A stretch of DNA of 64,000 bases from Octopus sinensis (GCF_006345805.1 NC_043012.1:43958001-44022000); one strand, 5' to 3'. Counted from the first letter of the stretch, positions 5,564 through 59,789 are shown. A program made the numbers and translations. Notes: a model not told the origin generated them from the sequence alone.

Positions 5564-6351
5564 CTTGAGAAAATACCCTGTTATAAGTGTTGAAATTCCA
5601 ATGAAGGAACATTGGATCAAGGTTAGAAACTGACTTTTTCTCTATAGGCAAGAAATCTTGAAATAAAACCGAACATTGACACATATACATGCATACATAG
5701 GTAAAGACGCCTTTAAGTCATGACTGACCTTGGGATTGCACCTAGAAAGTTCCCCTCCGAGGCACAAGTCTGGGCAAAGTTGCTCCTGGAAGACTAGCGG
5801 TAGCCCATGCTCAACAGCCTCTCCTCCCCGCACCACCGATGTCATCCAAGAGAAAGGCCAGGGCCGATGCAGCTTGGCACCAGTGACGTAGCGACTCATT
5901 TCCTCACCTGAGTGAACTGGAGCGATGTGTCTTGCTCAAAATCACAACACACAGCACGGTCCGGAAATCGAATTCACAACTTCACGATTGTAAACACGAC
6001 TCTCTAATCACTGAATCATGTATGCATGTGTGCATGTTTGTGTGTGCGTATGTAAGTGTACCTGTTTGTGTATATGTGGTGTGTGTGTGTGTGTGTGTGT
6101 GCGTGTGTGTATGTTACTGAGTTAACTTACCCGTGTATAAATTTACTTACATACCTGTTGTGAAGGCGGGCGTGTTTGAGTAAGATCGTGGTTTCGATTT
6201 CTTGACTGATCAGCGTGTTGTGTCCTTGAGCAAGGCACTTCATTTCACATTGCTTCAGTTTGCTCAGCTATAACGAGTACCAGCCTTCTCTCCGTCGAGC
6301 TCTTACATTCTGGGTCAAGACAGAGTCTCTTTGTCTCTCTGCCAACATTGC
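4576..6351. repeat. Copy 1 of an about 1.77-kb direct duplication flanking the assembly gap
   Basis: Near-identical to 6452-8221; differences are mostly 1-4 bp indels. Confidence 0.9.
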
Positions 6352-6451
6352 NNNNNNNNNNNNNNNNNNNNNNNNNNNNNNNNNNNNNNNNNNNNNNNNN
6401 NNNNNNNNNNNNNNNNNNNNNNNNNNNNNNNNNNNNNNNNNNNNNNNNNNN
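6352..6451. other. Assembly gap (100 N)
   Basis: Run of exactly 100 N. Confidence 1.
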
Positions 6452-6821
6452 CATACATACATACATACATACATACATATACTTATATGTGTGTGTGTAG
6501 AGAGAGAGGAGAGAGAGAGAGAGAGTGGGGGAGAGATGTACATATGCTTCAATAGCACACACGTTCACACTCAAACGCACACCCCAAAAAGGCAAAAACA
6601 TTGCTAATTATCAAATAATTATAATTATTTTTTTTTCTTGAGGTCAGATGTCATCTGTTTCCTGCAATTCTGACAAATTTTTCATTCCAATGTATCACTT
6701 TGTATAAACATTTTCTCTCTGGCAATGTGTATACGTGTATGTGTATCTGTTTATTGTTATACATTATTACGTGCATACATGCATGCTTGCATACCAATAT
6801 ACATATAATAGATAGATAGAT

Positions 6822-25883: not shown

Positions 25884-28800
25884 TTATACAATAATAAACA
25901 TTTTAAAGAAAGTTAAATGTAAATTGTTTTTGAAAGTTTCTTGGCCAATGCACTGTTCTGCCCGATTTTGTAACATACGGTGTGCTCGGGGCACCCGTTG
26001 ACGGCGAGGGTGGTGTTGTAGGAGCCGGTGAAGGTGTTTGTGCAGGTGAAGGCGTTTGTGCAGGTGAAGGCGTTTGTGCAGGTGTGAAAGTGTTGTTAAA
26101 GGTGCATAGGTGGGTGTGTCAAGGTTGTCATCAAAAGATGAAGACGTCTCAAAATGTGCCTTTTTTAAACGGTCCACGGAAACGGTCTCCGAACGACCAT
26201 TTATCTCAATCGTGAAAACCTTTGGTGTGCGAGAAAGCACACGAAAAGGTCCTTTATAGGGAGAAACAAGTGGGCCCTTCACAGAATCGTCCCGAACAAA
26301 AACATGCGACCAGGTGTTCATATCCGGTGGAAGATGGGACGGTGGAGATTGCTTTCTGGGAAGCATGGGCGGAAGGTTTGAAAAATATTCCCGCAGTCTG
26401 GTGACATAGGTCGCCGGATCATGGGGCGGGGAAGTGTCTGGCACACATCGTACCGGGCAATGCCAGTGTGGTACCATACAGCAGCTCTGGCAGCAGAAAA
26501 CCCCAGGTCTGCCTTGACAGCAGTCCGACAGCCGAGAAGCACAATGGGCAGAAATTCGATCCAGGACTGTGGGTCCGAAGAGGCACGAAGAGCGGCCTTG
26601 AGCTGTCTATGGAACCGCTCAACCAATCCATTAGACGCTGGATGGTAGCTTGTGGTGTGGATATGGTGCATACCCAAAATTCGCGACAATTCGCGAAATA
26701 GCGAGGCCTCAAACTGTCGTCCACGATCAGTTGTCAATCGGGACGGGACTCCGAAACGAGAAATCCAGTTTGAAACGAAAGCTCGCGCAACAGTCTCAGC
26801 AGAAATGTCTGCTATCGGAATGGCTTCTGGCCAGCGAGCGGAACGATCGACACAAGTTAATAGATAAGAGAACCCGCGACTCACAGGCCATGGTCCAACC
26901 AGATCGATGTGGACATGGCGAAAACGGGCCTCCGTGGGGGGAAATTGTCCAAGCGGGGCACGAACGTGCCGTTGAATCTTGGATCGTTGACACTTGGAGC
27001 AGGTGCGTGTCCAACAAGTAATTGTGCGACGCATATTCGGCCAGAAAAACCGAGCAGTGATTAATTTGAGGGTGGCAGCGATGCCAGGATGTGATAAGAA
27101 GTGCAGTGCTTCAAACACTGAGCGTTGATGGGTCTCAGGCACCAGTGGCCTGGGAGATCCAGTTGAAGTGTCACAAAGAATGGTGCCTTCGGCTGACGGA
27201 AGCGGAAGGTAGGAAAACTGGCAACAGGAGAACTTGGGAGAAGTTAAATCTAACGACGCCAAAGGTGGCTGCTCCTGCGAATGGCAGCTAAGTCGATAGC
27301 AGCAGGAGACGAAAGGGCGCAAACTGGAAGGCGAGAGAGAGCGTCAGCAGGAACGTTCTCTTTTCCAGGTATGTGTCGAATGTTGCTAGTAAATTGAGAG
27401 ATAAAATCCAGGTGCCGAAAAGCACGGGGTGAGAGTTTGTCCGTTTTTGAAAACAGGGCAAACGTAAGGGGCTTGTGATCCGTATAGATCACAAAATCTC
27501 GCCCTTCAAGTTGATGCTGGAAATGACGAACCGATAGGTAGATCGCTAGGAGCTCACGATCAAAGGTGCTGTATCGTCGTTCAGCTGGTTGCAGTTGACG
27601 GGAAAAGAAGGCTAGAGGTCGAACATGGTCATCCACTGTGTGTTGTAACACAGCGCCAATCGCAGTGTCCGATGCGTCCACAGTCAAAGAGAGAGAAGCA
27701 CCAGGAACTGGATGCAGCAAGCAAAGAAACAGAAGCCAGCTCCTTCTTAATGGACTCAAAGGCTGTCACTGCCTCAACAGAGAGGGTGACTTGACTGTCC
27801 TTTCTAGGAGAGTCCTTTAACAGCCTGGTGAGAGGTAGCAGCTTATCTGCACAACCGGGAATGAAGCGTCGGTAGAAATTGACCATCCCTAGATAATGCC
27901 TGAGCTGGCGCAAGGAAGTGGGGGGTGCGATGCGTTGAATGGCATCGACTTTTGACGAGAGGGGGCTGATTCCAGTCGAATCAATATGATGCCCTAGAAA
28001 ATCTAGGGAAGAGCGTCCGAAAACACACTTGTCGGGGTTTATGCGTATGCTATACGCGCGAAGACGCTGGAAGAGTTGAGAAAGGTGCCGGAGATGATTT
28101 TCTCGTGTGTCGCTCGCAATGAGTATGTCATCGACATAGGCAAACACAAAATCAAGACCGCGGACAACCTCATCAATGAAACGCTGGAAGGTGCTAGTAG
28201 CATTCCGCAAACCGAAACTCATGTACAAAAACTCAAAACACCCAAACGGGGTAGTGATTGCAGTTTTTGGAACGTCGGCTGGGTTGACCGGTATTTGGTG
28301 GTAAGCGCGTATCAGATCGACCTTCGAAAAAATGGTACAACCATGGAGATTTGCTGTAAAGTCCCGGAGATTTCTAATCGGATAGCGATCGGCTATTGTG
28401 ACGGCATTGAGGCGTCGATAGTCTCCAACCGGGCGAAAATCAGACGCCCTTTCGCGCCAAATGAAGGGGAGATGCCCATGGGCTGGTGGAGGGGCGTATA
28501 ATGCCAAGTTGAAGCATGTGCTCAAACTCGGCTCTGGCCGTTTTAAGTCGGTCTGGCGCTAGGCGCCGGGGGCGTGAGAATACAGGTGGCCCATTGGTGG
28601 TGATGAAATGGAGGGTCGAGTGGGTAGGATTTTCCGGTTTAAAGGCAATGTCCACTAGCTCCGGAAATGAAACCAAAAGAGAGTGAAAAGGGTCTCCAGA
28701 GTGGCAACAAAGAATGTCGGGCTAAGGACCGCAGTGGTGGAACTCCCAGTCGTGTGTAGAGAGCGACGTCGTGCTATCAAGAAGCCTCCGACGCCTGACA

Positions 28801-29614
28801 TCCACCAATAGGTTAAACCTATCCAGGAAATCAGCGCCGAGAATAGGATGCGGGATGTCAGCGATGACGAAAACCCATCGAAAGTCTCGACGAAGGTTGA
28901 GGTTGAGGCGCAGCGAAATCTGACCGTAAGTGGTTATGGGAGACGAGTCAATAGCATGCAAGACAATCGAAGAGCGCTTCGGCTTGTCTGCAGCCAGACG
29001 AAGGGGCCAGATGCTGCAACAGGAGCCGGTGTCTACCATGAAGAATTTCTCCGACACCAGATCTTTTACAAAAACTGCACGATTTTGGGAATGGCGATGG
29101 AAGAAGGTGACGTGCTCACCTCCTCCGGACTTAGTTTTCCGAGGGCTTGAAAATGCACGGCTGGGTACACCGATCTGCCTTTTGGTAGTAGAGCGACTAC
29201 GACTGCGTTGTCGGCGCTCGATCGCACGGGATAGATCGTCGATTCGCCGCGTGAGCGCATCAATCCGCTCGGTTAGTGAAATTTGCGCAGGGCCCCCTAT
29301 ACATGCACAGAGGCCTCGCGATGGAGATGGATTCGGAAATTCCAGTATTCCATCGGCCATCGTGGCAATCTGAATATTGCTCTCCCCGAACGTGTGTTGC
29401 GGCGGAGGATTTCTGCTTTCACAGACGCGTATGTGGCATCCGGGTGGGGACTTATTATTAGATCCCTGATCGATGCGGCGAGTCGGGGATGTAAGCCGGA
29501 ATATAGCAGGTGCAACTGCTGCTGTGGAGAAATGGCATGTGCATCAAAATACCACTCCACTTGGGCAAACCACAGGCCCATATCCCCCGTAAATGAAGGC
29601 AAACCTGAAGCCAT
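25884..29614 (-). pseudogene. gag-pol of element B, broken by deletions and frameshifts
   Basis: ORF pieces: gag (LWFAQVEWYF), protease (FMVDTGS), RT (YRRLN...FAYVDDILIAS), RNase H (LTVDASD...ELLAI...YTDH...ADALS), integrase (H..SH...[21 protein letters not shown]) and a GPF/Y-like GPLVSPYKGPF segment. Confidence 0.9.
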
Positions 29615-29984
29615 GCCTTTGTCGGAAGGAATCTGTGAGAAGGGGGCAGAAGGTATGGTCTAGAAGTGGAGAGAGAACACGTGGAACCGAGAAGGCAATT
29701 CAAAATTGTGTTTGTGTGTGCACCTCGTGGGTAGCAAAAAAAGGAATAGGTGTGTACAAGGAAAACAAAATACAGAAAAGGAAAAAAAATGAATGTGTGT
29801 GTTGTTTTCTTTTTTCTTTGTTTTTTTTTTTTTTGTACTGTGTGCGATGAATAAGGCTATTTGACCCACCTCGCCGTGCTGAAAAGGAGAAAATAGGAAA
29901 ATAAATGTGAATTTCCGCGCTCTTCGGCCCCAAAAAAAAACCTGTTCGCTGTGTCTTTTTCTATCCTGTTCTTTTTCTCAACTA

Positions 29985-29994
29985 GGGGTCACCA
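29985..29994 (-). promoter_or_regulatory. Primer binding site of element B (tRNA-Trp type)
   Basis: TGGTGACCCC lies 2 nt inside the 5' LTR and matches the 3' end of eukaryotic tRNA-Trp (complement TGGTGACCCCGACG). Confidence 0.75.
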
Positions 29995-29996
29995 AT

Positions 29997-30404
29997 TGTA
30001 ACGTGAAAGGATCTATCATCGAAGCACTGGCAGGGTGTCGAGATCCTTTCTAGTCACATACAATAATTCTTGTAGAAAACAAACAGACGAAACTCAGGTT
30101 AAAGGTGAACAGACAACTTGGTTTATTGATTCATGGTTGTACGTTGTCTGATGGGGGAATAGACAGCCTCTGAGATACTGCTGGTGTTGGTCGTTGAGGT
30201 TGGTTGAAGCTGGTGTGTGGCTGTCAGAGCCAGGAAAACCGTGACCGATCGCAGTGCTGTCTTGAGCCGAAGAGAGAGATTTGAGGTTCGCGGGCTCGAG
30301 AGATGTTTTCCCGCACATGCGCATGGGGAAGACTTCCGGTGGCCACCCGGAAGTAGTCCCATTCTGCGCATGCGCGCCGAACCCTACACAGTAGCATCAC
30401 TACA
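29997..30404 (-). repeat. 5' LTR of element B
   Basis: Identical to 25377-25784; AATAAA on the minus strand at about 30122-30127. Confidence 0.97.
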
Positions 30405-33118
30405 GGTCCACCAAGGTCAGTAGGTACGAGTAGCCCTGTGAAGCTGGTAGGGGGCCGAGAAGGTCGATATTGACATGGCTGAATCGGGCCTGAGGTGTAC
30501 TTTGGTGTGTTGACGGACCCTGGCTTGTTGACAGGGGATGCAGAACCTGGTCCAGTCCCCGATTTGCTTGGACATACAGTGCCAGATAAATATGCTTGAC
30601 AACAGCCGCCGTGTAGCTTTAGTACCTGGGTGGGAGAGTCCATGAATGACGTCGAAAACTTTCTTGCGCCAGGTTGATGGGACGATTGGTCGTGGCTTGC
30701 CAGTGGATAGTAGGATTGTACCGTTTGAGCCAAAATGTAAATCCTGCAAAGAAAGTGATGTGATGGCTGTGCGGTAGGCCCTGATCCCGTCATCTGTCTG
30801 TTGGGTTGCAGCCATAGCTTCGTAATCCAAGCCTTCTGTTATTGGTGCTAGGTAGGTGTGAGAGCGGGTAGGAGCACGAGAAAGTGCGTTGGAAACTGGG
30901 TTGCCTTTGCCAGCTATGCATTGTATGTCTGTGGTGTACTAAGAAATTACCGATAGCTGTCGTTGTTGGCGTGCCGACCAAGGCTCCGAGAGCTTGCTCA
31001 TAGCAAAGGTGAGTGGTTTGTGATCCGTGAATACTGTAAACGTGCGGCCTTCAAGGAAATACCGAAAGTGGCGGACACTTAGATGGACAGCCAGTAGTTC
31101 CCTGTCCAAAGCACTGTATTTCTGTTCAAGGGATCGTAGTTGTCGGCTGAAGAAGGCGAGTGGTCGCTACTGTTGATGTATTGTTCAAAAACACCTCCAA
31201 TAGTTGTGTCGGATGCATCAACTGTGAGTACAGTCCGAGCTGACATGTGAGGATGGGGCAGCATGGTTGCTTGGGCCAGGGCTTGTTTTCTGGATTCGAA
31301 GGCTGAAGTTATTGTACTGTCCCACTCCACCTGTCTTTTTGCACCTTCTTTTGATGGTGCCTTGTACAGGGGTCTCATCACGTTTGCTGCAGAAGGGTTG
31401 AAGCGATGGCAAACGTTTACCATGCCCACAAATTGATATAGAACCTTGTTTGTGGTGGAGCGTGGAAAGGATAGAATAGCTTTTACTTTACCTGGCAGGG
31501 GTGTAGCGCCAGCACTTGTGATTCGATGTCCCAAGAAGTCGATTTCTGTCGCACCAAAAATGCATATGGCGGGATTGATTACTAAACCATACTGTTCCAG
31601 CCAATCAAAAAGAGTCACTAGGTGCCTCTTATGTAGCTCTGCGTTTGGGCTTGCAATGAGGATGTCATCTAAGTATGCAAAGACAAAATCAAGACCTCTG
31701 CACAGAGTGTCCATCAAGCGTTGGAAGGATTGTGCCGCATTTTTCAGCCCAAAGCGTTACGTAGGAATTCGTACAGACTGAAAGGAGTGATCACAGCGGT
31801 TTTAGGTACATCGTCGTCTTGTACTGGTATTTGGTGGTATCCCCGGATGAGGTCAACCTTGGAGAAAACAGAGCACCCGGCTAGTTGGGCAGAAAAATCT
31901 TGTATATTTGGAATGGAGTAGCGGTCGGGTGTCGTATCCGCATTGAGACAGCGCTAATTTCCGCAGGGTCGATAACGTCCGTTGGATTTGGGGGCTACAT
32001 GCACAGGTAATGATCAGGGACTGCTTGATCGGCGAACAATACCCAAGGCCTCCATATTGTCGAATTCGGCCTTTGCGATTGGTTGCTATACGGGGGGGGG
32101 GGGTTATTGGGGGTTATTGGCGACCACTCACTTTCTTCAAATCCACCAGTAGTAAATGTGCTCGAAGAAACTCTGCACCGATTATGGGCTGATGGACATA
32201 GGTGATGGTGGAAGCCCATGTGTATTTTCGTGGGCCGACATTGAGGAAAAAGGTGCGACGACCGTATGCCTCGATTGTGGACCTGTTGGTGACTGTTAAA
32301 GGTTGGCTATGCTTTCCGTGATTGATGTCCCTTGCCGACGCCGGGATGATGCTGACTTCTGCTCCTGTGTCGATGAAGAACCTGCACCCGGAGCTGCGAT
32401 TGCGGACATAGAGGAGCATTTTGGCCATGTCTACCGGCCACCATGGTGTTCAATGGCAGCCGACCCTGGTGTTTCCCTGGTTCACTGGTGAAGGGATCCT
32501 GAAGCTACATGATTGTTTACATTTTGTCGCCTTTTTACCAAACTTTGCACGGTAGAAGCACAGGTCATCAAGCTTAACCCTACCCAGTCTCGGACCCGGC
32601 CCTATGGCGTTGACCACTGGATAAAAAAAATGCCTGTCAGTTGCCTTTGCTAATTGATTTCGGTCTGAGTTCTGAGGGCCTGGACCTGGGGTGGAAGCTT
32701 GCGGAGGAATATTTCTTTAAACAAAAAGGAAGGTAACTCACCGGGGGTGGGGACTAATGCCAACATCCTGTCCATCAGTTCTGACGGCTTGGAATCGTCT
32801 AATTCCTCCTCCAGTATCCTGGCTGCCACTTCTCTTTCACTGCGTCGGAATGTATCCACTTGCTTATCTTTCACTATGGCATATTTGTTTATTGGTGGGG
32901 GTGGGTTAAAATTTCCAGCAACCTCGTTGCTGTGTCTTCGTCTAGTGTCGCCACAGCTTGCGAGTACTCTGTTTGGTCAGCCGTTATCTTGTTTATATCA
33001 AATTGAGCTTCTGCCTGCACGAACCACAACTCAGCCCTCTTAGACCAGAACTGTGGTAGCCTCAGTGGTGTTTTGTTGCCAGCCATGTTTGTTTCGGTAG
33101 CGGGAGCTGCTGTCCGAT

Positions 33119-33619: not shown

Positions 33620-34410
33620 TGCAAGCTTAGGGCATATAAGAGGTGTAGTGGTATCACTGGAAAGTTAATGGAAAAAATAGTCATTTTGTGTGACAAATGT
33701 GCAGTTACAATAAGCACTAAAAATGCACAGACAATGCACTCCCTCAGATGCTTAGGGGCTTCATTAGAAGTAGTTGATAACTACTGTTACTTAGGCGATC
33801 AAGTTAGCAGTGGAGGAGGAAAATCTAAAAGTGTAATTGCTAGAATAAGAACGAGCTGGGTAAAGTTCAGAGAGTTGCTATCTTTGTTGGTAACTAAGGA
33901 CCTCTCCCTCTGAGTGAAAGGCAGATTGTATAATGCCTGTGTACATGCATGGCAGTGAAAGGTGGGCTTTGACTACAGAGGACTTGTGAAGGCTTGAGAG
34001 AAATGAAGCCAGCATGCTAAGCTGGATGGGTAATGTCAGAGTGTAAATGATTTAAGAGGAAAATTAGGTATATGAGGCATCAGATGCTGTGTGCAAGAGA
34101 GAAGACTGTGCTGGTTTGGTGATGTGATGCATACAGGTTGGTCCTTTACAGGTGCCAGTATCACATAAAATGAATTTGTGCTGGTACTGAATAAATGCAC
34201 TCATGCCAGTGCCATGTAACAAGCACCCGGCACAATCTGTAAAGTGGTTGGCATTAGGAAGGGCATCCAGCTGTAGAAACCATGCCACAACAGACAATTG
34301 GAGTCTGAACAGCTCCCTGGCTTGCCAGCTCCTGTCAAACCGTCCAACCCATGCCAGCATGGAAAGTGGATGTTAAATGATGATGGTGATGATGATGATG
34401 ATGATGATAC
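33620..34410 (+). mobile_element. Decayed RTE-type LINE 3' fragment (same family as 49050-50455)
   Basis: AYKRCSGITGKL...LEVVDNYCYLGDQVSSGGG...ARIRTSWVKFRELL; ends in the family 3' UTR and a (GAT)n tail. Confidence 0.75.
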
Positions 34411-39233: not shown

Positions 39234-40097
39234 TATATATATATATGTGTGTAGTTTGCTTTTACGTTAAGGTAACATCAACGAAAATAGTCCTCCACCT
39301 AACGAGAGATAAGTGTTGTTTAATGTACATAACAATATAGTTATGAGCTGCTAGTAGTTTGATACATTGGAGATGTTTTCCAGGCAGGGTTTAATAACAT
39401 GCCTGGTGTCTCCAGGCTCTGAGCACATGGCCTAAACAAGTTACAGAAAAGAGGAAGGTAAATGCTAAAAGTGGGAAAAGAAAGAGGAAAAAGGCACAAT
39501 ATGCGGATACATGGAGAAGTTTCTTTCAGTGAATTGGAGAACTCTACCCTCTCTAGATTGGGCAGCTGTATCACAGACTTTAGACTCCTTTGGTGATTCC
39601 ACATCAACTAGCTTTATGGCTTTACAGTCAAAGGGGACATAACTCTAATTCTTTTGTTTTTCACCTTTTCTTCCACCAGTCCATTTTTTGTTTCTACCTT
39701 CCTCCTGTTTTTTTCTCTTGTTCTGATTTGTAACTTGTATAGGCCTATGCTAAGAGCCTGAAGATCCCTAGGAGACACTAAGCATGTTATAAAATCCTGC
39801 CTTGAAAACATCTCCAATGTATGAAGGTATTACCAGCTAAAAACTATATACTTAAACAAAATATATGTACACACACACACGTACATACATACTTGTTTGT
39901 TTCCATGTTCAGTTATAATAAAATCAATTTGACATTAGTATGATGGGTTACTCTATACTTTTGCAGAATACAAATTTATTATTCATATACAAGAATGTTG
40001 TTATCAATAACTTTGAAGCCACTGTCAACATTTCTGTATAAGAATTATGCCAGTATGGAAGACGAACGTTAAATAAGGATGATGATGATGATGATGA

Positions 40098-40134
<37 letters not shown>

Positions 40135-42032: not shown

Positions 42033-42525
42033 AGTGCAGTTGTAGCTGTGTGGTAAGAAGCTTACTTCCCAACCACATGGTTCTAGGTTCAGTCCCAGCC
42101 TCAGACTGACCAAAGCCTTATGAGAGGTTTTGGTAGATCAAAACTGAAAGAAACCCGTCATATCATCATCATCATCATCATCATCATTTAGCGTCCGTTT
42201 TCCATGCTAGCATGGGTTGGACGGTTTAACTGGGGTCTGTGAAGCCGGAAGGCTTCATCAGGCCCAGTCAGATTTGGCAGTGTTTCTACGGCTGGATGCC
42301 CTTCCTAACGCCTATATATGTATATATAAATGTATGTGTGTGTCTTTCTGTACATGTTCATCCCCTACCACTGCTTGACAGCCAGTATTAGTCTCATGGT
42401 ATTAGAGTTCGATAGAATAAGGCTTAAAAAAAGAATGGTATAGGGGTCAGTGCACTCAACTAAAAATTAAGGTGGTGCTCCAGCATGGCCGCAGTCTCAC
42501 AACTGAAACAAGTAAAAGGTAAAGT
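42033..42525 (+). mobile_element. SINE family 1 containing an RTE 3'-tail insertion (about 42165-42312)
   Basis: Family-1 head and tail flank a (CAT)n-TTTAGCGTCCGTTTTCCATGCTAGCATGGG segment. Confidence 0.7.
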
Positions 42526-46110: not shown

Positions 46111-47665
46111 CTTACTAACAGTGACACTTGATGAATTCATTCTCCAAGAACAGTTTCCATTAGAAACTAGTCCCTTGCTTCTATGGTACCACAGCCATCA
46201 CACCTGCTCTTTTATTGTGATTTTCAGGTCAGCAGCACACGTTGTTTAGTTGGATTAAAAATGCTCATTCAATTCTCCATACTTAAAAGTTATTCCCCAT
46301 TTTATCTACATTAACCCTTTAGCATTTAAACCAGCAATGTCCAGCCCAAATTTTCTACTTTTATGTTCAAACTGGCCAGATACGCCGTACTTGAGAAAAC
46401 TCATCAAGCCAAGTGAGATCATAGCTGTGGTTGATGCTTGTGTCATGTAACTGGGCTGTTAAAAGCATATTTCAATTGTTGGGCGATATACTGTGCTTGT
46501 GAGATCATAGTCGTGGCCGATGCCTGCGCCATCTGATTGGCATGTATGCACCATTCATATATCAGGCCTCATGGAGGCAGTGACATCAAGCCAAGTGAAA
46601 TCGTAGTCAAGCCCAATGCCAATGTTGCATAACTGGCCTGTTAAAAGCACCCTTCAATCGTTGGGTGATATTCTATGCTTGTAAAGACCTGTCAAACTGA
46701 GTGAAATCATAGTTGTGGCCGATACCAGTGCCGTCTGACTGGCATCCATGCTAATGGCATGTAAAAAGCACCATTCAAGCATTAAGCCTCATGGAAGCAG
46801 TGACAGGTGACCAAGATCCTTGGCAATATACCATGCTTGTGTTGACCTGTCAAGTCAAGTGAGACCATAGTCGTGACTGATACCAGTATCAGGTCAATTG
46901 CACCCATGCTGGTGGCATGTGAAATATGCCTACTACATTCTCGGAGTGGTTGGTGTTAGGAAGGGCATCCAGCCATAGTAAACTATGTCAAATCAGATTG
47001 GAACCTGGCGCAGCCGCCTGGCTTACCAGTTTTCAGTTAAACCGTCCAACATGGAAAGCGAACATTAAATGATGATGATGATCATCATCATCATCAAAAT
47101 CTCAAGGCTATGAGATAATGCATGATTAATTCAAAACAATGTGAATAAATAAGAATTACATTTGACAGAGTAATTGGAATGCTGAAGGGTTAAAATAAAT
47201 AATATACAGCAAATGTTAACATCTCAGTAATAGTAACGAAAGATTAGGAATAACAATGGAAATCCAGTATAGTGAAGTATATGAAGACTGTGAAATTGAT
47301 GTAAAATGAGAGACATGATATGAAGTCAGTATAAATAATATACGAGGTGGTATCAAAAAGGTTCCTGGATTAGTTATCTGAATCTATAAAAGAGGGTTTG
47401 TATGTGTGTGCATATGTTCCTTATGCATTCCAAAACCGAGTTGCTGATTTTGATGTATGAGGTATCAAAAGATTCGGTAGGCATTTGGCTACCAACTAGG
47501 TTCAGTTACTGCTGGCTTATAGTTAAACACTGGTAGGTTATAGCCTAAAAGTTTCAAAGTAAAATCTAAAAGAAACGTATTGAAGATACAACATAAAGTG
47601 AACAGGTTATCAATGAACACAGGCTTGTTTTGTTAGTCTGGCAGAAATCATAAAGTGAGATTTAC

Positions 47666-49049: not shown

Positions 49050-50455
49050 TGCTGGTTTCTGAATATATTTGTCAAGCAGGCAAACCACAAATCCCTTCAG
49101 GTAGATGGCCCTGCTCGATCTGCAGAAAAGGCGTAGGTAGAAACTGTATAAGATGTACTCAGTGTAAGCTATGGACACATAAGAGGTGCAGCAATATCAA
49201 AGGGAGGCTAACTGGGAGGATAGCTTTTGTATGTGGCAGATGCTCGGGAGCAATAAACACTGAAAATGCGCAGAGAACAACTTCCGCCACATTCCAGGGA
49301 GAAAAACTACAAGTAGTTGATAGCTTCCGTTACCTAGGTGACCAAGTCAGTAGAGGGGGAGGGTGCACTGAAAGTGTAGCTGCTAGAATAAGAATAGCCT
49401 GGGCTAAGTTCAGAGAGCTCTTACCTCTGCTGGTGATAAAGGGCCTCTCACTCAGAGTAAAAGATAGACTGTACGACGCATGTGTATGAACAGCCATGCT
49501 ACATGGCAGTGAAACATGGGCCTTGACTGCTGAGGATATGCGTAAGCTCGCAAGAAATGAAGCCAGTATGCTCCGATGGATGTGTAATGTCAGTGTGTAT
49601 ACTCGACAGAGTGTTAGTGCCCTGAGAGAAAGGTTGGACCTAAGAAGCATCAGATGTGATGTGCAAGAGAGACGACTGCACTGGTATAGTGATGTGGCGA
49701 GAATGGATGTGGATAGCTGTATGAAAAAGTGCCACACCCTAGCAGTTGAGGGAACCTGTGGAAGAGGTAGACCCAGGAAGACCTGGGATGAGGTGGTGAA
49801 GCATGACCTTCAAACATTGGGCCTCACCGAGGCAATGACTAGTGACCGGGACCTCTGGAAATATGCTGTGCTGCAGAAGACTCGGCAAGAACAAGTGTGG
49901 CCTATGCTAGAAGTGTAACCCGTCCACTTATGCGTGCCTTTTCTTCATTGGACACTAAACTCTGCTTATGAAGACCAGTTGGGGCAAGTGAAATTGAAGT
50001 CGAAATCAAAGTCGGTGACTGGCATCCATGCTAGTGGAGTGCTAAGAGTACCATACGAGTGAGATCGTTGCCAGAGCAACAAGCTGGCCTTTGTGCCAAT
50101 GGCACGTTAAACACACCAGTTGAGCATGATCGTTACTGTGTCGCCTTACTAGCACTTGTGCTGGTGGCACGTGAAAAAACATTCAAGTGAGGTTGTTGCC
50201 AGTGCCAGTGCCACTGGACTGGCTCCTGTGCAGGTGGCACATAAAAAGCACTATTTGAGTGTGGCTGTTGCCAGTACCACCAAACTGGCCTTCATGCTGG
50301 TGGCATGTAAAAGCACCCACTACACTCTCGAAGGGCATTCAGCTGTAGAAACTGCCAGATCAGATTGGAGTCTGGTTTGCCAGACCTCAGTCAAATCGTC
50401 CAACCCATGCTAGCATGGAAAGCAGATGTTAAATGATGATGATGATGATGATGAA
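49050..50455 (+). mobile_element. RTE-type LINE, 5'-truncated, with a PHD-like finger inside the RT region; antisense in TM2D3 intron 3
   Basis: ORFs 49049-49489 and 49496-49918 (FRYLGDQV, MLHGSETWA, GRGRPRKTW), a long 3' UTR and a (GAT)n tail. Confidence 0.85.
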
Positions 50456-51124: not shown

Positions 51125-51225
51125 GATAACTACAATAATAAAATAATTCATTAATAAATATATGTAAATAATCTTATAAAATATAAATATATTCTTTAAA
51201 ATAGATATCTATATATCTATCTATC

Positions 51226-51441
<216 letters not shown>

Positions 51442-51481: not shown

Positions 51482-52641
51482 TACAAAATATAAATTAAGT
51501 GAAAACTAAATACAACACTTTAAACTATATACATTAAATCAAATTATTAATTAATATATTAATTTAATAAACATCCAAATAAAGTTTAATACCCATTAAG
51601 CAATTAATACTAAAAACCTTAATATTAATTAATATACATAATGCTAGTACAAGCCATAAATACTGGAATCAAAAATATGAAATGGTTCAAATATAGACAC
51701 ACCCATTATATAAACTAACTATACAATTAATATATATGTAGTATCTATAGATTTAATATATAACTCAATAATACAGTTGACCAAAATATCAATTAATATA
51801 AAAACTAATTTACTTAAATGTAATACTACTTGATAAATATACCACCTAATTATTAAATAATGTATTGTCTAACAAAATTAATTCTCAAATTAAATTATAT
51901 GTAATACGTTAAATCTCTTTATAAACACTAAGACCTATATATTTTTTTACGTTTAAAATTCAATTATATTATTTTCATCGGACAAGCTAAGTAACGGTTT
52001 TTGCTTATAAATATTATTTGGCTTTTGAATTATATTGGGTTTGATTATTATTGCTGTTGAAATATTATTATTTTTATATATATTTTATTGATAGTTATAA
52101 GTTATGATAGTTATTAATTATGATATCTATTTATTTAGAATGCTTTATTATTATTTTTATAAAGGGATTTAACGTATTACATATAATTTAATTTGAGAAT
52201 TAATTTTGCTAGACAATACATTATTTGTATATATAAATTATCAATAATAATTGTATTTAACTGCTATTTCTAAATTTCGGTATGTGGTGAAGCAATTTTG
52301 CTAAACCCTAATTATAATTATGTTTATAATTATAATAATTTTTGTATAAGTTTACCAATAATGGTTCTTTTAACATACCAAACTACTTGGTAAGATTATC
52401 AATTATAAATTGATTAATTAATATTACCCTTTATTATTATTGATATAATTCTCTCCCTGATAGTAAACTGCAGTTTCTGTGGGATTACTCGTAACGCACA
52501 TGGGTGATTGGGAGAAGGTGCAAGCCCTAACTCGTCTGCATGAATTCAGAATACTGGTTTTTTGGATGTTAATTTTGTTTGATGGCGCTCGGTCAAATAA
52601 ATATCTTGATTACTAGTGCTCTCAAATTTATAACTGAAATC

Positions 52642-54108: not shown

Positions 54109-54268
54109 CTAAGCACATTACTGGCTCTTTAACTTTACACGTTGAAACATACTTCTGTCTTGGTGCTGCAACAACTCGGCAAGAAGTCGAGGAATTGCAA
54201 GTATAGTTCGATGGATCCAGCTGGTAACAAAACCTACATTCTAACTGCCTTTCAAATTTTTCTGGACC
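54109..54268 (-). CDS. TM2D3: TM2D3-like exon 3
   Basis: ttcaaag|GGT...TTA G|gtgagt; GPEKFERQLECRFCYQLDPSNYTCNSSTSCRVVAAPRQKYVSTCKVKEPVMCL(G) aligns with the CRFCWQL...PRQRY...HCLG region of TM2D3. Confidence 0.95.
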
Positions 54269-54350
54269 CTTTGAAAATAGAAATATAAAGTTTAATATTA
54301 AGAAAACAATGTATAAGTTTATAAAATAGGATACATTATATATACATTAT

Positions 54351-54480
54351 TCTTCTACAAAAATGTTGTTGACAGTGACTTCAAAATTTCAGCCAGACAA
54401 GCCATAATTGGTCTGCAATCCAATGATGCCTTAGCTGGCCGAAACTCTGAAGTCACTGTCAACAACATTTTTGTAGAAGA
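54351..54480. repeat. 130-bp fold-back palindrome (33-bp perfect outer arms, 28-bp imperfect inner arms, 8-nt loop)
   Basis: 54351-54383 is the exact reverse complement of 54448-54480. Confidence 0.95.
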
Positions 54481-55779
54481 CTAATAAATTTGTACTTGAC
54501 AAAAATATAGAGTAACCCATCAGATTAATTATAATTGAACATAAAAACAAACATCATCATCATCGTTTAACATCCGCTTTCCATGCTAGCATGGGTTGGA
54601 CGATTTGACTGAGGACTGGCGAACCAGATGGCTGCACCAGGCTCCAATCTTGATCTGGCAGAGTTTCTACAGCTGGATGCCCTTCCTAACGCCAACCACT
54701 CTGAGAGTGCTTTTACGTACCACCGGCACAAGGGCCAGTCAGGCGGTACTGGCAACGGCCATGAAAAAATTGTATTTTTTATTATTTTAATATATATATG
54801 TCTGTGGACGAAGAGATGGTGGCAGGCAATTTAACATGGGAGTATTCTTAATTCTACGTATTAATTCATGTTATCTACAACCAGATTATTTTGGAATGTT
54901 ACTTGTTGTGAACTAGTTTCCTACCTGAAAGCTCTATGCCTCAACCACTTAATGCCATCACACATCTAAATATGTCTTCAAAATCCCCATCCGACTGTTA
55001 AACATATTTATGTTTTAACATGGTCAAGGTTTAGGAAGTTGATAGCAATTGTAGCAAAGTACTTTGCTTGCTGCAGTGTTTTGGTGACTGTTATAAATGA
55101 AATAAGAGAGGAGAGAGCTACTATGACCAGCAAACTCATCTCTTTTATGCGACATAACAGATAGGTGATTGTAGTTTAAGAGTTTGTTTTGTTATTCAAT
55201 AATTTTAGTAGACAGCAGCCAACCAAAGTATTAAATCAGTTTCTCAATCAGAAGTTATTCCATTTTTGTGGATATGCTACGTTTAGATACTGAGACTTAG
55301 TTTAAAATATGTAGCCTTCATTTGAAAGGCAGTAGATAATTAATTAAATAAGATTTGATCATTACGTTGAGTTTGTTAATTAATTGTGTAGAAGCTCCTT
55401 TAACACAAACAACTTCAAATCTACAAAATTAGAAAACCCTCAGTAAAACATAAATAGTACATCTATCCATGACCAGAGATGAACTTCTTTCTCTTCAATG
55501 ATATAGCTTAAAACAAGGTAAATAAGTTACTGTTTTCTTTAGCAAAGACTTCATAAATAACCATAAAGGCTTAAGCCAGTATGGTTAAGTATCTTGACCA
55601 AGAACACAATGTTTGCAGTGGAATGCACACTAACAACGTAATCTCTTATCCACACTGTAATTATTCCTTTTCAATTTTTATCTTTTTCCATCTTGAGTCA
55701 AATTAAGTTCATGGTTAAAATAAAAGACTGACCTGCCTTAATTTTATGATTTAATAGCAATGATGATGATGATGATAAC

Positions 55780-58070: not shown

Positions 58071-59789
58071 AAGAGAGACTAGCTGTTAAAGTTAACAATA
58101 ATACACTAAGAGTGATGAAGGCTATGGAGGGAGGGGAGGAAAGCAGCTGGATCATCAAGAATACTCCTGAGATACTGAAAATATCTGGCAAAGTAAGACA
58201 TGTATTAATCAATCAGGTTATAGAGACAGGTGTCATACCCAATGGCTGATGTAGCAGTATTGTAACCAACTGTTACAAGAGCAAAGGAGATGCCCAAGAA
58301 CAGTGGTTCTCAACCATCATTTTTTTTTTCCTGATTACCCGATTCATTTCTGTTTCACTTGAATGGAACCTCATAGTCATTTGATGTTTAAAAAAATTAA
58401 TATATTTTTATAATTAAATATTATTAGGAATAATATAAACAAAATTGTTAAAATATTTTGTGTATAACCAATTTATTGCATGTAAATTTTAATAAAATCT
58501 TATATGGACTGCAAGGGTCATATGGATCCCAGCTGAGTACCGCACTCTAGAAAGAAGCTGGTACAAAGGCATCAATCAGATGGATCAAGTTATAAGAGTA
58601 AAAAAGAAAATGAGTTGTAACACAACTAATTAATTAGGAAAACAATAAGCTTAGATCAAATGCAGTTCATGTTTATTAAGAGAGGAGAAGAGCAGAAAGG
58701 CAGAGATTTTCCAATGTTGATGTTCTAGACTGCAAGACACTGAGAAATGTATGCTGTGGATAATGGTACAATTGCATTTAGGGATTCTGAAAAGAAAGGG
58801 GCATGATATCTTGTCACCACTATATCATAATGTGGGGTAACCATGTATCTCCTTATGTAGTGAGACATCGGTTCTTGTTCTTCTATTATACATTAGCTTC
58901 TCAATACCTGGCATATTCCACCTCCCTCACTCAAGGCCTTTTTCTTTGTCATGCGAATTACTTGGCAATCTTATTAGTGCTGTACTCATTACACTTTGCA
59001 AAGTGGTTGGTGCTAGGAAGAGCATCTAGCTGTAGAAAACATGCCAAACAGTCATTGGAGTTAAATATAGTCCTCTAGCTCAATGGATCTTGTTCAGCCA
59101 TCCAGCCCATCCTAGTATGGAAGACAGGTGTTAAGTGATAATCATATACACACTTAGTCTTGCATGCATGTCTGTGTGTGTACACACGCATACACATATA
59201 CTGTGTATAGTATATCTTGGATGTACAAATATATGCACAATTGCTACTGTTGAATTTAGAGCTCCATGTAGATTATCATCATCCAGTCTGTTCTCAGTAT
59301 ACTGGTTAAGTACTATACTTAGTAGTATTACTAATTGTGATATACAAAGCAAATGTAGGAGAAATTAGGACAGGTTTATATCATTTGTTCCTACATATAT
59401 TTCACCATTATGGTTGTTTGGATCTCAGTATTGGCTCCAAAAAGCTTACATCTACATGGAGGAGAGAGTGTTGTCACTCAGCAATGGGGAAAGTGGAAAA
59501 AGAAGGACTGGACTAGAAACTAAAGAGGACTCAGGACTCAGAGGTGGCAAGTGGTGTTAGTGTGGGGTGAGTAACACACTTTTCATATTTACATTTTCAC
59601 GATATCATTCATGCTATCATAACTTTAATATTTTGATTTTATTTTTTCATGTTTATTTTCATGTGTCATTCATAGTATCATATTTTATTTTTATATATTT
59701 TTAATTGTTATATGTCCCCACATGTTTTGTAGTGTCCCCTCTATGTTATGCCTTTATGGCAAAATTTTGAAATAAAGTAGCTTGCTTAC

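What the first reader, a model, noticed from the sequence alone, without database searches (positions are those of the whole stretch)
54346..54485. Near-perfect 130-nt hairpin 82 nt upstream of the TM2D3 exon 3 acceptor
Seen: a perfect 33-bp outer stem (54351-54383 with 54448-54480) continues into a 28-bp inner stem with 21 Watson-Crick pairs and an 8-nt loop. Four of the seven inner mismatches are A-C on the plus strand, which become G-U wobbles on the minus (pre-mRNA) strand; none are G-T on plus. This is a weak bias toward folding on the TM2D3 sense strand. No TSD or transposase was seen. Known: coleoids have extensive ADAR editing and many lineage-specific miRNAs. Inference: it could be a Drosha/Dicer substrate (inner 64 nt is pre-miRNA sized), an ADAR substrate that affects nearby branch-point use, or a tiny MITE.
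Basis: partly seen in the sequence, partly recalled or inferred. Interest (0 to 1): 0.7.

Follow-up and report, generated by a model that had tools for sequence, protein, structure and literature searches.

The report
Repeat-derived intronic hairpin in octopus TM2D3
The hairpin is real, but it is the self-complementary end of an about 0.2-kb dispersed repeat sitting in a TM2D3 intron of Octopus species; it drifts at the neutral rate, so it looks like ordinary repeat-made double-stranded RNA and not a microRNA gene or a conserved regulator.

Summary
The RNA fold is -92.8 kcal/mol (z = -15).

The window is Octopus sinensis chromosome CM016874.1. The hairpin lies in TM2D3 intron 2, 82 nt from the perfect stem to the exon 3 acceptor.

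It is not a stand-alone structure. It is the 3' module of a roughly 206-230-nt repeat made of a 66-95-nt non-palindromic module plus a palindrome. A second copy lies 14 kb away in the window, and a third lies on another chromosome.

The orthologous copy is present in O. vulgaris and O. bimaculoides. It is absent from the same intron in Argonauta and Sepia.

Between O. sinensis and O. bimaculoides the hairpin differs at 9.8% of sites and by a 17-nt arm deletion. Introns of this gene differ by about 6-7%, and the adjacent 3' splice region by 2.6%. So there is no purifying selection on the hairpin.

The G·U strand bias is within chance. The perfect outer stem is best explained by arm-to-arm homogenisation (template switching).

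Most likely role: an incidental intronic dsRNA that ADAR would edit promiscuously. This is untested. It is not a canonical miRNA. Interest is low.

The parts
54346..54485 (-). The hairpin (palindromic module of the repeat copy 'hp'). It is transcribed on the minus strand as part of TM2D3 intron 2.
   Evidence: The MFE is -92.3 to -92.8 kcal/mol on the sense strand, with z between -15 and -17.
54420..54485 (-). 5' arm of the hairpin in the sense RNA. The perfect part is 54448-54480.
   Evidence: In O. bimaculoides this arm lacks 17 nt and has 6 substitutions.
54412..54419 (-). 8-nt apical loop.
54346..54411 (-). 3' arm of the hairpin in the sense RNA. The perfect part is 54351-54383.
   Evidence: There are 5 substitutions against O. 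bimaculoides.
54486..54551 (-). Non-palindromic 5' module of the same repeat copy. It is shared with copies c2 and c3. O. sinensis and O. vulgaris lack a roughly 16-nt segment here that O. bimaculoides, c2 and c3 keep.
   Evidence: Homology of hp 54450-54553 with c2 40013-39894. Alignments. Unit-only nhmmer hits with E from 1e-12 to 1e-22.
54552..54770 (-). Octopus SINE copy whose (GATG)n tail (54552-54564) abuts the 5' end of the repeat.
   Evidence: blastn finds five further SINE copies in the window. Sequence shown.
54269..54345 (-). 77-nt intron segment between the hairpin and exon 3, holding the polypyrimidine tract, the acceptor AG at 54269-54270 and presumably the branch point. This is the conserved part of the region.
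   Evidence: 2 of 77 sites differ between O. sinensis and O. bimaculoides. It is partly alignable to Argonauta (54310-54101, 87%) and Sepia (54287-54101, 71%).
54109..54268 (-). TM2D3 coding exon 3 (GPEKFERQLECRF...VMCL).
   Evidence: The exon model gives a 256-aa protein identical to XP_029646457.1.
39892..40052 (+). Copy c2 of the same repeat: the 5' module plus a shorter 71-nt palindrome that lacks the central ~64 nt. It is about 80% identical to hp, in the opposite orientation, 14.4 kb away, and present in all three Octopus species.
   Evidence: nhmmer E = 1.8e-40.

Best explanation
The hairpin is the self-complementary 3' module of one copy of an old, dispersed, non-coding repeat of about 0.2 kb. 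The repeat consists of a 5' non-palindromic module followed by a palindrome of 70-140 nt. Its transposon class is unresolved: it is foldback or MITE-like, but without terminal inverted repeats at both ends and without a TSD.

This copy entered TM2D3 intron 2, next to a SINE tail, in the Octopus lineage. That happened before the split of O. bimaculoides from O. sinensis/O. vulgaris, and it is not found at that site in Argonauta or Sepia. Since then it has drifted without constraint.

The perfect 33-bp outer stem seen in O. sinensis reflects concerted evolution of the two arms. I infer that this is DNA-level template switching or arm-to-arm conversion. It is not conservation of a functional RNA.

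When the intron is transcribed, the sense strand is predicted to fold into a 66-70-bp dsRNA. In an octopus this is most likely edited promiscuously by ADAR and then degraded with the intron. I see no evidence for a dedicated role in small-RNA production or in exon 3 splicing.

Shown: the structure, the repeat family, orthology, the rates and the arm co-variation. Inferred: template switching, ADAR editing and neutrality of function.
For: Structure.

Repeat family:
- Copy c2 lies at 39892-40052, and its homology runs about 70-95 nt beyond the palindrome on one side only.
- Copy c3 lies on a different chromosome (CM016860.1; L034 2050-2268). Its nhmmer E-value was 1.4e-11 before it was added to the model. 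It has the same two-module layout and also folds as a hairpin (z = -8.4).
- There is no further homology between the three contexts, so this is a discrete element.
- Family members keep pairing through different sequences: 9 of 48 predicted pairs show changes on both sides (arm alignment).

Orthology and rates:
- The copy is present in O. vulgaris (2 differences) and in O. bimaculoides (12 substitutions in 123 aligned nt, 9.8%, plus a 17-nt deletion in the 5' arm).
- The intron baseline is 5-7.5%, or 5.9% in the three-way alignment. The adjacent 3' splice region differs by 2.6%.
- O. bimaculoides keeps a near-perfect inner stem but has a degraded outer stem. O. sinensis shows the reverse. Each lineage has therefore decayed differently from a nearly perfect ancestor.
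- The intron in Argonauta and Sepia has no hairpin and no inverted repeat of 16 nt or more.

Context from papers:
- O. bimaculoides has an exceptionally high hyper-editing rate, and 4.4e-3 of random loci form long near-perfect dsRNA. Palindromic repeats self-fold and are edited (PMC5625713).
- In O. vulgaris most editing is in introns and 3'UTRs, and it very rarely alters splice sites (PMC9699675).
- Molluscs, including O. bimaculoides, show no dedicated endo-siRNA pathway (PMC12479628).
- Template switching can create and maintain perfect hairpin stems without selection (PMC8794818).
- The same gene carries another foldback element with 71-nt arms at 97% complementarity.
Against: - Only three loci of the family were seen, in about 115 kb of Octopus DNA. 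The genome-wide copy number, the consensus, the ends and the class of the element are not established, and no TSD was found.
- A HMMER scan of a 55-aa translation of the hairpin against 1.84 billion protein representatives gave no hit. This would be a little surprising for a very abundant, transcribed repeat, although such ORFs are rarely called.
- Two complementary double changes occurred in the outer stem of the O. sinensis/O. vulgaris lineage. At 54476/54355 an A-U pair became C-G. At 54481 U became G, followed by A to C at 54350 in O. vulgaris only. That is more than independent neutral hits would give (my rough expectation is about 0.1), so selection on pairing cannot be excluded by sequence alone.
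- No RNA data could be examined, so ADAR editing and the absence of small RNAs are both unverified.
Confidence: 0.72

Rival explanations
1. A selected cis-acting dsRNA. The hairpin would be kept because, as an ADAR-bound or edited duplex 77-82 nt upstream of the acceptor, it tunes branch-point use or exon 3 inclusion, or tunes editing elsewhere in the transcript.
For: The structure is very stable on the sense strand. There are two compensated pairs in the outer stem of the O. sinensis/O. vulgaris lineage. All three Octopus orthologues still fold strongly (-92, -92 and -68 kcal/mol).
Against: The hairpin diverges at or above the neutral rate, 9.8% against about 6-7%. O. bimaculoides has lost 17 nt of one arm. 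The part that is perfect differs between lineages. The hairpin is absent in Argonauta and Sepia, whose exon 3 and 3' splice region are conserved. The structure comes from a repeat that folds the same way at unrelated loci. Editing very rarely alters splice sites in octopus (PMC9699675).
Confidence: 0.1
2. A lineage-specific, repeat-derived microRNA or other Dicer product. Either the inner 64 nt or the perfect outer duplex would be processed into about 22-nt RNAs.
For: The inner stem-loop is pre-miRNA sized. Octopus has gained many novel miRNA families (PMC9699675). Repeat-derived miRNAs are known elsewhere (human Made1/mir-548; from memory).
Against: - The stem is a continuous 66-70 bp, with no basal single-stranded junction about 11 bp below a cleavage site. 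By textbook knowledge, canonical Drosha substrates have a stem of about 35 bp.
- Rfam matches are only generic long plant-type hairpins, scoring 29-59 bits against gathering scores of 100-245.
- The 17-nt arm deletion in O. bimaculoides destroys any conserved 5p/3p register.
- Hairpin k-mers occur nowhere in the searchable papers or in the supplements of PMC9699675. This is a weak negative, because full miRNA sequences are not held there.
- No endo-siRNA pathway is detected in molluscs (PMC12479628).
Confidence: 0.04
3. A classical Tc1/mariner-type (Stowaway-like) MITE that consists of the palindrome alone (54350-54481), with a TA target-site duplication.
For: TA dinucleotides flank 54350-54481 on both sides (54348-54349 and 54482-54483). 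The element is small, non-coding and almost fully palindromic.
Against: TA is trivially frequent in this AT-rich intron. Homology among all three copies, including the unlinked c3, continues for about 66-95 nt beyond one end of the palindrome and stops at the same point (TG|TTTGTTT). The palindrome is therefore not the whole mobile unit. The outer bases 54346-54349/54482-54485 also pair and are shared with the other copies.
Confidence: 0.08
4. A local, one-off inverted or segmental duplication, with no mobile element involved.
For: The first two copies found lie only 14 kb apart and in opposite orientation.
Against: A third copy with the same two-module structure lies on another chromosome. 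The three contexts share nothing else.
Confidence: 0.02

Closest known systems
Self-folding palindromic interspersed repeats that act as ADAR hyper-editing substrates (for example the palindromic Harbinger-derived repeat of Xenopus, and inverted-repeat dsRNA in octopus; PMC5625713)
   Same: It is a non-coding repeat whose own sequence is nearly a palindrome. It is transcribed within a host intron and is predicted to form a long, nearly perfect dsRNA. It is lineage-specific, and this copy evolves neutrally.
   Different: Editing at this locus was not observed here. The element class is unknown, with no Harbinger-type TSD or TIR at both ends. The element carries an additional non-palindromic 5' module.
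MITEs and foldback elements, including human Made1, the source of the mir-548 family (recalled from memory, not checked)
   Same: It is small, non-coding and dispersed, with long internal inverted repeats that give a hairpin when transcribed.
   Different: No TSD was found. The inverted repeat occupies only one end of the shared unit. The stem is about twice the length of a pri-miRNA stem, and there is no small-RNA evidence.
Canonical animal pri-miRNA/pre-miRNA hairpins (MirGeneDB-type octopus miRNAs, PMC9699675)
   Same: It is an intronic hairpin on the sense strand, and the inner 64 nt are of pre-miRNA size.
   Different: The duplex is a continuous 66-70 bp with no basal junction. It is not conserved in register between O. 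vulgaris and O. bimaculoides. No Rfam family match reaches threshold. It is derived from a repeat.
Helentron/DINE-1-type non-autonomous elements (3' stem-loop, associated microsatellites, no TSD; a lead recalled from memory)
   Same: It has a stem-loop at one terminus, no TSD, and a microsatellite directly next to the element in all three copies.
   Different: The termini do not show the 5'-TC ... CTRR-3' Helitron signature. The stem-loop is far larger than the usual 16-20 nt. Subterminal inverted repeats were not identified.
Quasipalindrome correction by replication template switching (PMC8794818)
   Same: The arms change in concert. Mutations on one arm reappear as complements on the other, giving a perfect stem without constraint on sequence.
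   Different: This is a process and not a family. It is inferred here from two double changes and from differences between paralogues, and was not observed directly.

Membership tests
MITE (non-autonomous DNA transposon) | Terminal inverted repeats at both ends of the mobile unit | tested here: not met
   The unit shared by three copies is asymmetric. A 66-95-nt non-palindromic module precedes the palindrome, and its outer end (TTTGTTT...) has no inverted partner at the other end.
MITE (non-autonomous DNA transposon) | Target-site duplication flanking the element | tested here: not met
   No direct repeat flanks hp, c2 or c3 at the homology boundaries. The TA next to the palindrome lies inside the shared unit. 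No empty site was available. The Argonauta intron is rearranged by SINE fragments.
MITE (non-autonomous DNA transposon) | Small, non-coding, multi-copy and dispersed | tested here: met
   The copies are about 160-230 nt with no coding capacity. Three loci lie on two chromosomes within about 115 kb of Octopus DNA sampled. The genome-wide count was not obtainable.
Animal microRNA gene | Pri-miRNA stem of about 35 bp between a basal single-stranded junction and an apical loop (textbook Drosha/DGCR8 requirement) | tested here: not met
   The predicted stem is a continuous 66-70 bp. The inner 64 nt sit on top of a perfect 33-bp duplex with no junction.
Animal microRNA gene | [quoted passage not shown] | tested here: not met
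   The locus is present in both species, but the O. bimaculoides 5' arm lacks 17 nt and has 6 substitutions. The 5p/3p register is therefore not conserved.
Animal microRNA gene | Discrete 20-24-nt reads from both arms with 2-nt 3' overhangs | not testable with these tools
   No small-RNA read data are available. The sequence is absent from the searchable text and supplements.
Animal microRNA gene | Match to a curated miRNA family (Rfam) at gathering score | tested here: not met
   The best hit is MIR2646 at 59.4 bits against a gathering score of 245. All hits are generic long hairpins.
ADAR (A-to-I) hyper-editing substrate | Long, nearly perfect intramolecular dsRNA within a transcribed region | tested here: met
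   There are 33 perfect pairs plus further pairs. The sense-strand MFE has 46 consecutive pairs including G·U, at -92.8 kcal/mol. The hairpin lies in intron 2 of TM2D3 on the sense strand. Transcription is assumed from the gene annotation.
ADAR (A-to-I) hyper-editing substrate | Clusters of A-to-G mismatches between RNA and genome | not testable with these tools
   No RNA-seq reads are available.
tRNA-derived SINE | Internal Pol III A and B boxes or a tRNA-like head | tested here: not met
   ARAGORN finds nothing in 54200-54900. There is no B-box-like match inside 54346-54551.
Helitron/Helentron non-autonomous element | 5'-TC and 3'-CTRR termini with a short 3' subterminal hairpin, and no TSD | tested here: not met
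   The ends of the shared unit are TTTGTTT... and ...AAGAATAAT(G). Only 'no TSD' and 'hairpin at one end' fit.

The most novel reading that the evidence does not exclude
Complementarity of the two arms is actively selected, both in this copy and across the family, because the transcribed hairpins are used. They might serve as Octopus-specific repeat-derived small-RNA precursors, or as ADAR-binding duplexes that modulate splicing or editing of host transcripts such as TM2D3. On this reading the two compensated pairs in the O. sinensis/O. vulgaris lineage are true compensatory substitutions and not template-switch events.
Probability: 0.05. Interest if true: 0.5.

Novelty: new member of a known kind. 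Interest (0 to 1): 0.15.

Why it matters
It matters mainly as a caution. A striking, near-perfect 130-nt hairpin beside a splice site in a coleoid genome need not be a miRNA or a regulatory element. Here it is the foldback end of a dispersed repeat that decays neutrally.

It is also a small, clean example of two things:
- Octopus introns acquire long dsRNA, the raw material for the heavy non-coding ADAR editing reported in these animals.
- The arms of a quasi-palindrome can stay perfect, or co-vary, without selection on the RNA.

The repeat family has a 5' module, a foldback, an adjacent microsatellite and no TSD. It may deserve classification by someone with the full genome. If the family is abundant, masking it would remove many false miRNA-like candidates from scans of this kind.

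Tried and rejected
1. Exact 19-mer scans of the metagenome and viral contig collections. There were 28 loci, but blastn shows only 19-21-nt chance matches with no wider homology. They are irrelevant.

2. Rfam at a permissive E-value. Only sub-threshold generic long-hairpin families matched.

3. Searching the papers library, and the supplements of the octopus miRNA paper, for hairpin k-mers. Nothing was found. The supplements hold seeds and MRE 8-mers, not full miRNA sequences, so this negative is weak. I did not pursue seed matching, because about 2 chance matches would be expected.

4. A HMMER scan of the 55-aa stop-free translation of the hairpin against 1.84 billion representatives, meant to find other copies through spurious ORFs. 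It gave 0 hits.

5. Sampling more Octopus DNA through retrotransposon proteins.
   - The first search gave two usable Octopus loci, one of which held copy c3.
   - The second search returned no further Octopus proteins and was wasted.
   - Two further look-ups added nothing new.
   - One ENA contig (L036) has no octopus SINE and is probably not octopus.

6. Local segmental duplication as the origin of hp and c2. This was rejected after c3 was found.

7. A transcription-associated A>G bias as the explanation of the G·U excess. The polarised O. sinensis/O. vulgaris intron substitutions show no asymmetry (A>G 8 against T>C 10; C>T 15 against G>A 10). The G·U excess itself is not significant, so nothing needs explaining.

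8. Defining the insertion site from Argonauta. Its intron is rearranged by tandem SINE 3' fragments, so no clean empty site exists.

Full report

- There are 33 consecutive Watson-Crick pairs, 54351-54383 with 54448-54480.
- A 28-pair inner stem, 54384-54411 with 54420-54447, has 21 Watson-Crick pairs.
- Four inner mismatches are A·C on the plus strand, which are G·U on the minus strand. Three others are A·G, C·C and A·G. None is G·T.
- The loop is 8 nt, 54412-54419.
- Four more pairs sit beyond the single mismatch at 54350/54481.

The repeat finder gives 75-nt arms at 84% complementarity. The minus-strand RNA folds at -92.8 kcal/mol (z = -15.0). The plus strand folds at -77.8 kcal/mol (z = -13.6). 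No shuffle out of 200 comes close. The structure is real and far beyond chance.

**Where it is**

I assembled a five-exon TM2D3 model on the minus strand from splice sites and the TM2 'DRF' motif. The 256-aa product matches O. sinensis TM2D3 (XP_029646457.1, Pfam TM2) exactly, on chromosome CM016874.1 of GCA_006345805.1. The window is therefore Octopus sinensis.
- Exon 3 is 54109-54268, with the acceptor AG at 54269-54270.
- The hairpin is in intron 2 on the sense strand.
- It is 82 nt from the perfect stem, or 77 nt from the hairpin base, to the exon.
- A SINE on the same strand (54552-54770) ends with its (GATG)n tail 66 nt upstream of the hairpin.

**The hairpin is part of a repeat**

A sensitive self-search found a second, diverged copy (c2) at 39892-40052 in the opposite orientation.
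- Homology between hp and c2 does not stop at the palindrome. It runs on for about 70-95 nt on one side only (hp 54450-54553 with c2 40013-39894), and ends in both copies at the same sequence, TG|TTTGTTT.
- c2 has only the outer part of the palindrome (71 nt).

To test whether this was merely a local duplication, I sampled unlinked Octopus DNA through retrotransposon proteins.
- One of two 21-kb Octopus loci, on a different O. sinensis chromosome (CM016860.1), holds a third copy, c3, at L034 2050-2268.
- c3 was detected at nhmmer E = 1.4e-11 before it was included in the model.
- It has the same layout of a 5' module plus a palindrome, and it also folds into a long hairpin (z = -8.4).
- The three genomic contexts share nothing else.

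The element is therefore a discrete repeat of about 160-230 nt, dispersed across at least two chromosomes. All three copies are directly preceded by a microsatellite: the (GATG)n SINE tail for hp, (CA)n(CATA)n for c2, and (TATG)n(TG)n for c3. No copy has a recognisable TSD. There is no tRNA-like head or B box.

One unlinked copy in about 43 kb (L034 plus L035) implies, very roughly, 10^3 to 10^5 copies for a genome of about 2.7 Gb. The true count was not obtainable.

Family members keep their self-complementarity through different sequences. RNAalifold on hp from three species plus c3 finds 9 of 48 pairs changed on both sides. The arm-by-arm alignment shows the two arms of each copy resembling each other more than the arms of other copies.

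**Orthologues and rate**

Exact-protein look-ups gave the TM2D3 loci of O. vulgaris (L031), O. bimaculoides (L032), Argonauta hians (L030) and Sepia pharaonis (L033). The SINE, the 5' module and the hairpin are all present at the orthologous site in both other Octopus species.

O. vulgaris differs at two positions:
- 54456, G to A, breaks a pair in the 'perfect' stem.
- 54350, A to C, repairs the basal mismatch.

O. bimaculoides shows much more change:
- It has 12 substitutions in 123 aligned nt (9.8%).
- It has a 17-nt deletion in the 5' arm.

For comparison:
- Long intron alignments of this gene differ by 5-7.5%.
- High-quality columns of a three-way alignment differ by 5.9%.
- The 77 nt between the hairpin and exon 3 differ by 2.6%.

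The hairpin is therefore not under purifying selection. The conserved element is the 3' splice region next to it.

The pattern of decay differs between lineages. O. bimaculoides has a near-perfect inner stem (19 of 20 pairs) but a damaged outer stem. O. sinensis and O. vulgaris have a perfect outer stem and a damaged inner one. Both patterns descend from an ancestor that was almost perfect throughout.

The intron in Argonauta and Sepia has no hairpin and no inverted repeat of 16 nt or more. Only exon 3 and about 20-45 nt of the upstream intron align. No family copy was found in the 59 kb of those two loci.

**Strand bias and the perfect outer stem**

I polarised the changes using the other species and c2/c3.
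- The four G·U pairs of O. sinensis arose by three A>G changes and one C>U change on the sense strand.
- Over all lineages there are about 6 wobble-making against 2 disruptive transitions, plus several transversions.
- Introns of the same gene give 23 against 20 for the same classes.
- The bias is not significant, with a binomial p of about 0.15-0.2.

What is unusual is two complementary double changes in the outer stem of the O. sinensis/O. vulgaris lineage.
- Pair 54476/54355 is C-G there. It is A-U in O. bimaculoides and in both arms of c2.
- Position 54481 changed from U to G, and its partner 54350 then changed from A to C in O. vulgaris alone.

Independent neutral hits would give roughly 0.1 such events by my estimate. 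The published mechanism that produces exactly this without selection is replication template switching between the arms of a quasi-palindrome (PMC8794818). A single conversion tract over the outer 33 bp would explain both the perfect stem and the double change. Selection on pairing cannot be formally excluded. However, the loss of 17 nt in O. bimaculoides and the above-neutral rate argue against it.

**What it most likely does**

As part of the pre-mRNA, the sense strand should form a 66-70-bp duplex.
- Octopus has an exceptionally high hyper-editing rate and an unusually high fraction of loci able to form long dsRNA (4.4e-3). Palindromic repeats are known to self-fold and be edited (PMC5625713).
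- In O. vulgaris most editing is in introns and 3'UTRs, where hairpins abound, and it very rarely alters splice sites (PMC9699675).
- Molluscs, including O. bimaculoides, show no dedicated endo-siRNA machinery or products (PMC12479628).

The most probable fate is therefore promiscuous ADAR editing, followed by turnover with the intron. This is inferred, not shown.

A canonical miRNA is unlikely for four reasons:
- The stem is about twice the canonical length and has no basal junction.
- Rfam gives only generic sub-threshold hits.
- The arm register is not conserved in O. bimaculoides.
- The structure is inherited from a repeat.

Structures like this are common locally. TM2D3 intron 3 carries another foldback with 71-nt arms at 97% complementarity.

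**Comparison with known kinds, and verdict**

It works like the self-folding palindromic repeats that feed ADAR hyper-editing. It resembles foldback and MITE-type elements, and it shares 'hairpin at one end, microsatellite, no TSD' with Helentron/DINE-1-type elements (a lead from memory). It fails the defining tests for:
- a classical MITE (TIRs at both ends, TSD);
- a tRNA-derived SINE;
- a Helitron (termini);
- a miRNA gene.

I therefore file it as a new, unclassified member of a known kind: an interspersed foldback repeat forming intronic dsRNA. It is ordinary for an octopus genome, and the interest is low. The only mildly notable points are the concerted evolution of the arms and the unresolved class of the repeat.

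No step had to be referred.

Noticed in passing
window 51855-52226: Another foldback or MITE-like element lies in TM2D3 intron 3. Its arms, 51855-51925 and 52156-52226, are 71 nt long and 97% complementary, separated by a 230-nt AT-rich spacer. It looks younger than the hairpin studied here and is an equally good candidate dsRNA.
   Followed up: partly
window 54552-54770, 50262-50446, 46936-47082, 42174-42312, 34243-34390, 58999-59046: There are six copies or fragments of the abundant octopus SINE with (GATG)n tails. Copy c2 of the repeat is fused directly to the last ~40 nt of one more SINE 3' end plus its tail (40050-40100).
   Followed up: partly
window 25884-32449 (minus strand): A degenerate Ty3/gypsy-type LTR retrotransposon. 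Its reverse transcriptase, RNase H and integrase ORFs are in different frames. The closest proteins are 'K02A2.6-like' of O. sinensis and O. bimaculoides (75-78% identity).
   Followed up: partly
window 39330-39413 / 39771-39854: An inverted repeat of 84 nt at 83% complementarity, with a 357-nt spacer, lies just upstream of copy c2. It may be another MITE-like element.
   Followed up: no
window about 6330-6460: A run of N, probably an assembly gap, shows as a run of X in the translation. It is flanked by (TGTA)/(TG) microsatellites.
   Followed up: no
window 51211-51430: A long (AT)n-rich perfect palindromic microsatellite: 110-nt arms at 92% complementarity, with a 58-nt perfect core.
   Followed up: no
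L030 12751-13145 (Argonauta hians TM2D3 intron 2): Three tandem SINE 3'-end fragments, each with a (GATG)n tail, sit directly upstream of the conserved 3' splice region. This is the position where Octopus has the SINE, the repeat and the hairpin.
   Followed up: partly
hp 54552-54564; c2 39870-39891; L034 2269-2380: All three copies of the repeat start at the same TG|TTTGTTT and are immediately preceded by a microsatellite. Copy c3 is bracketed by (TG)n on one side and (CA)n on the other. This could be a target preference or a variable tail; it is unresolved.
   Followed up: partly
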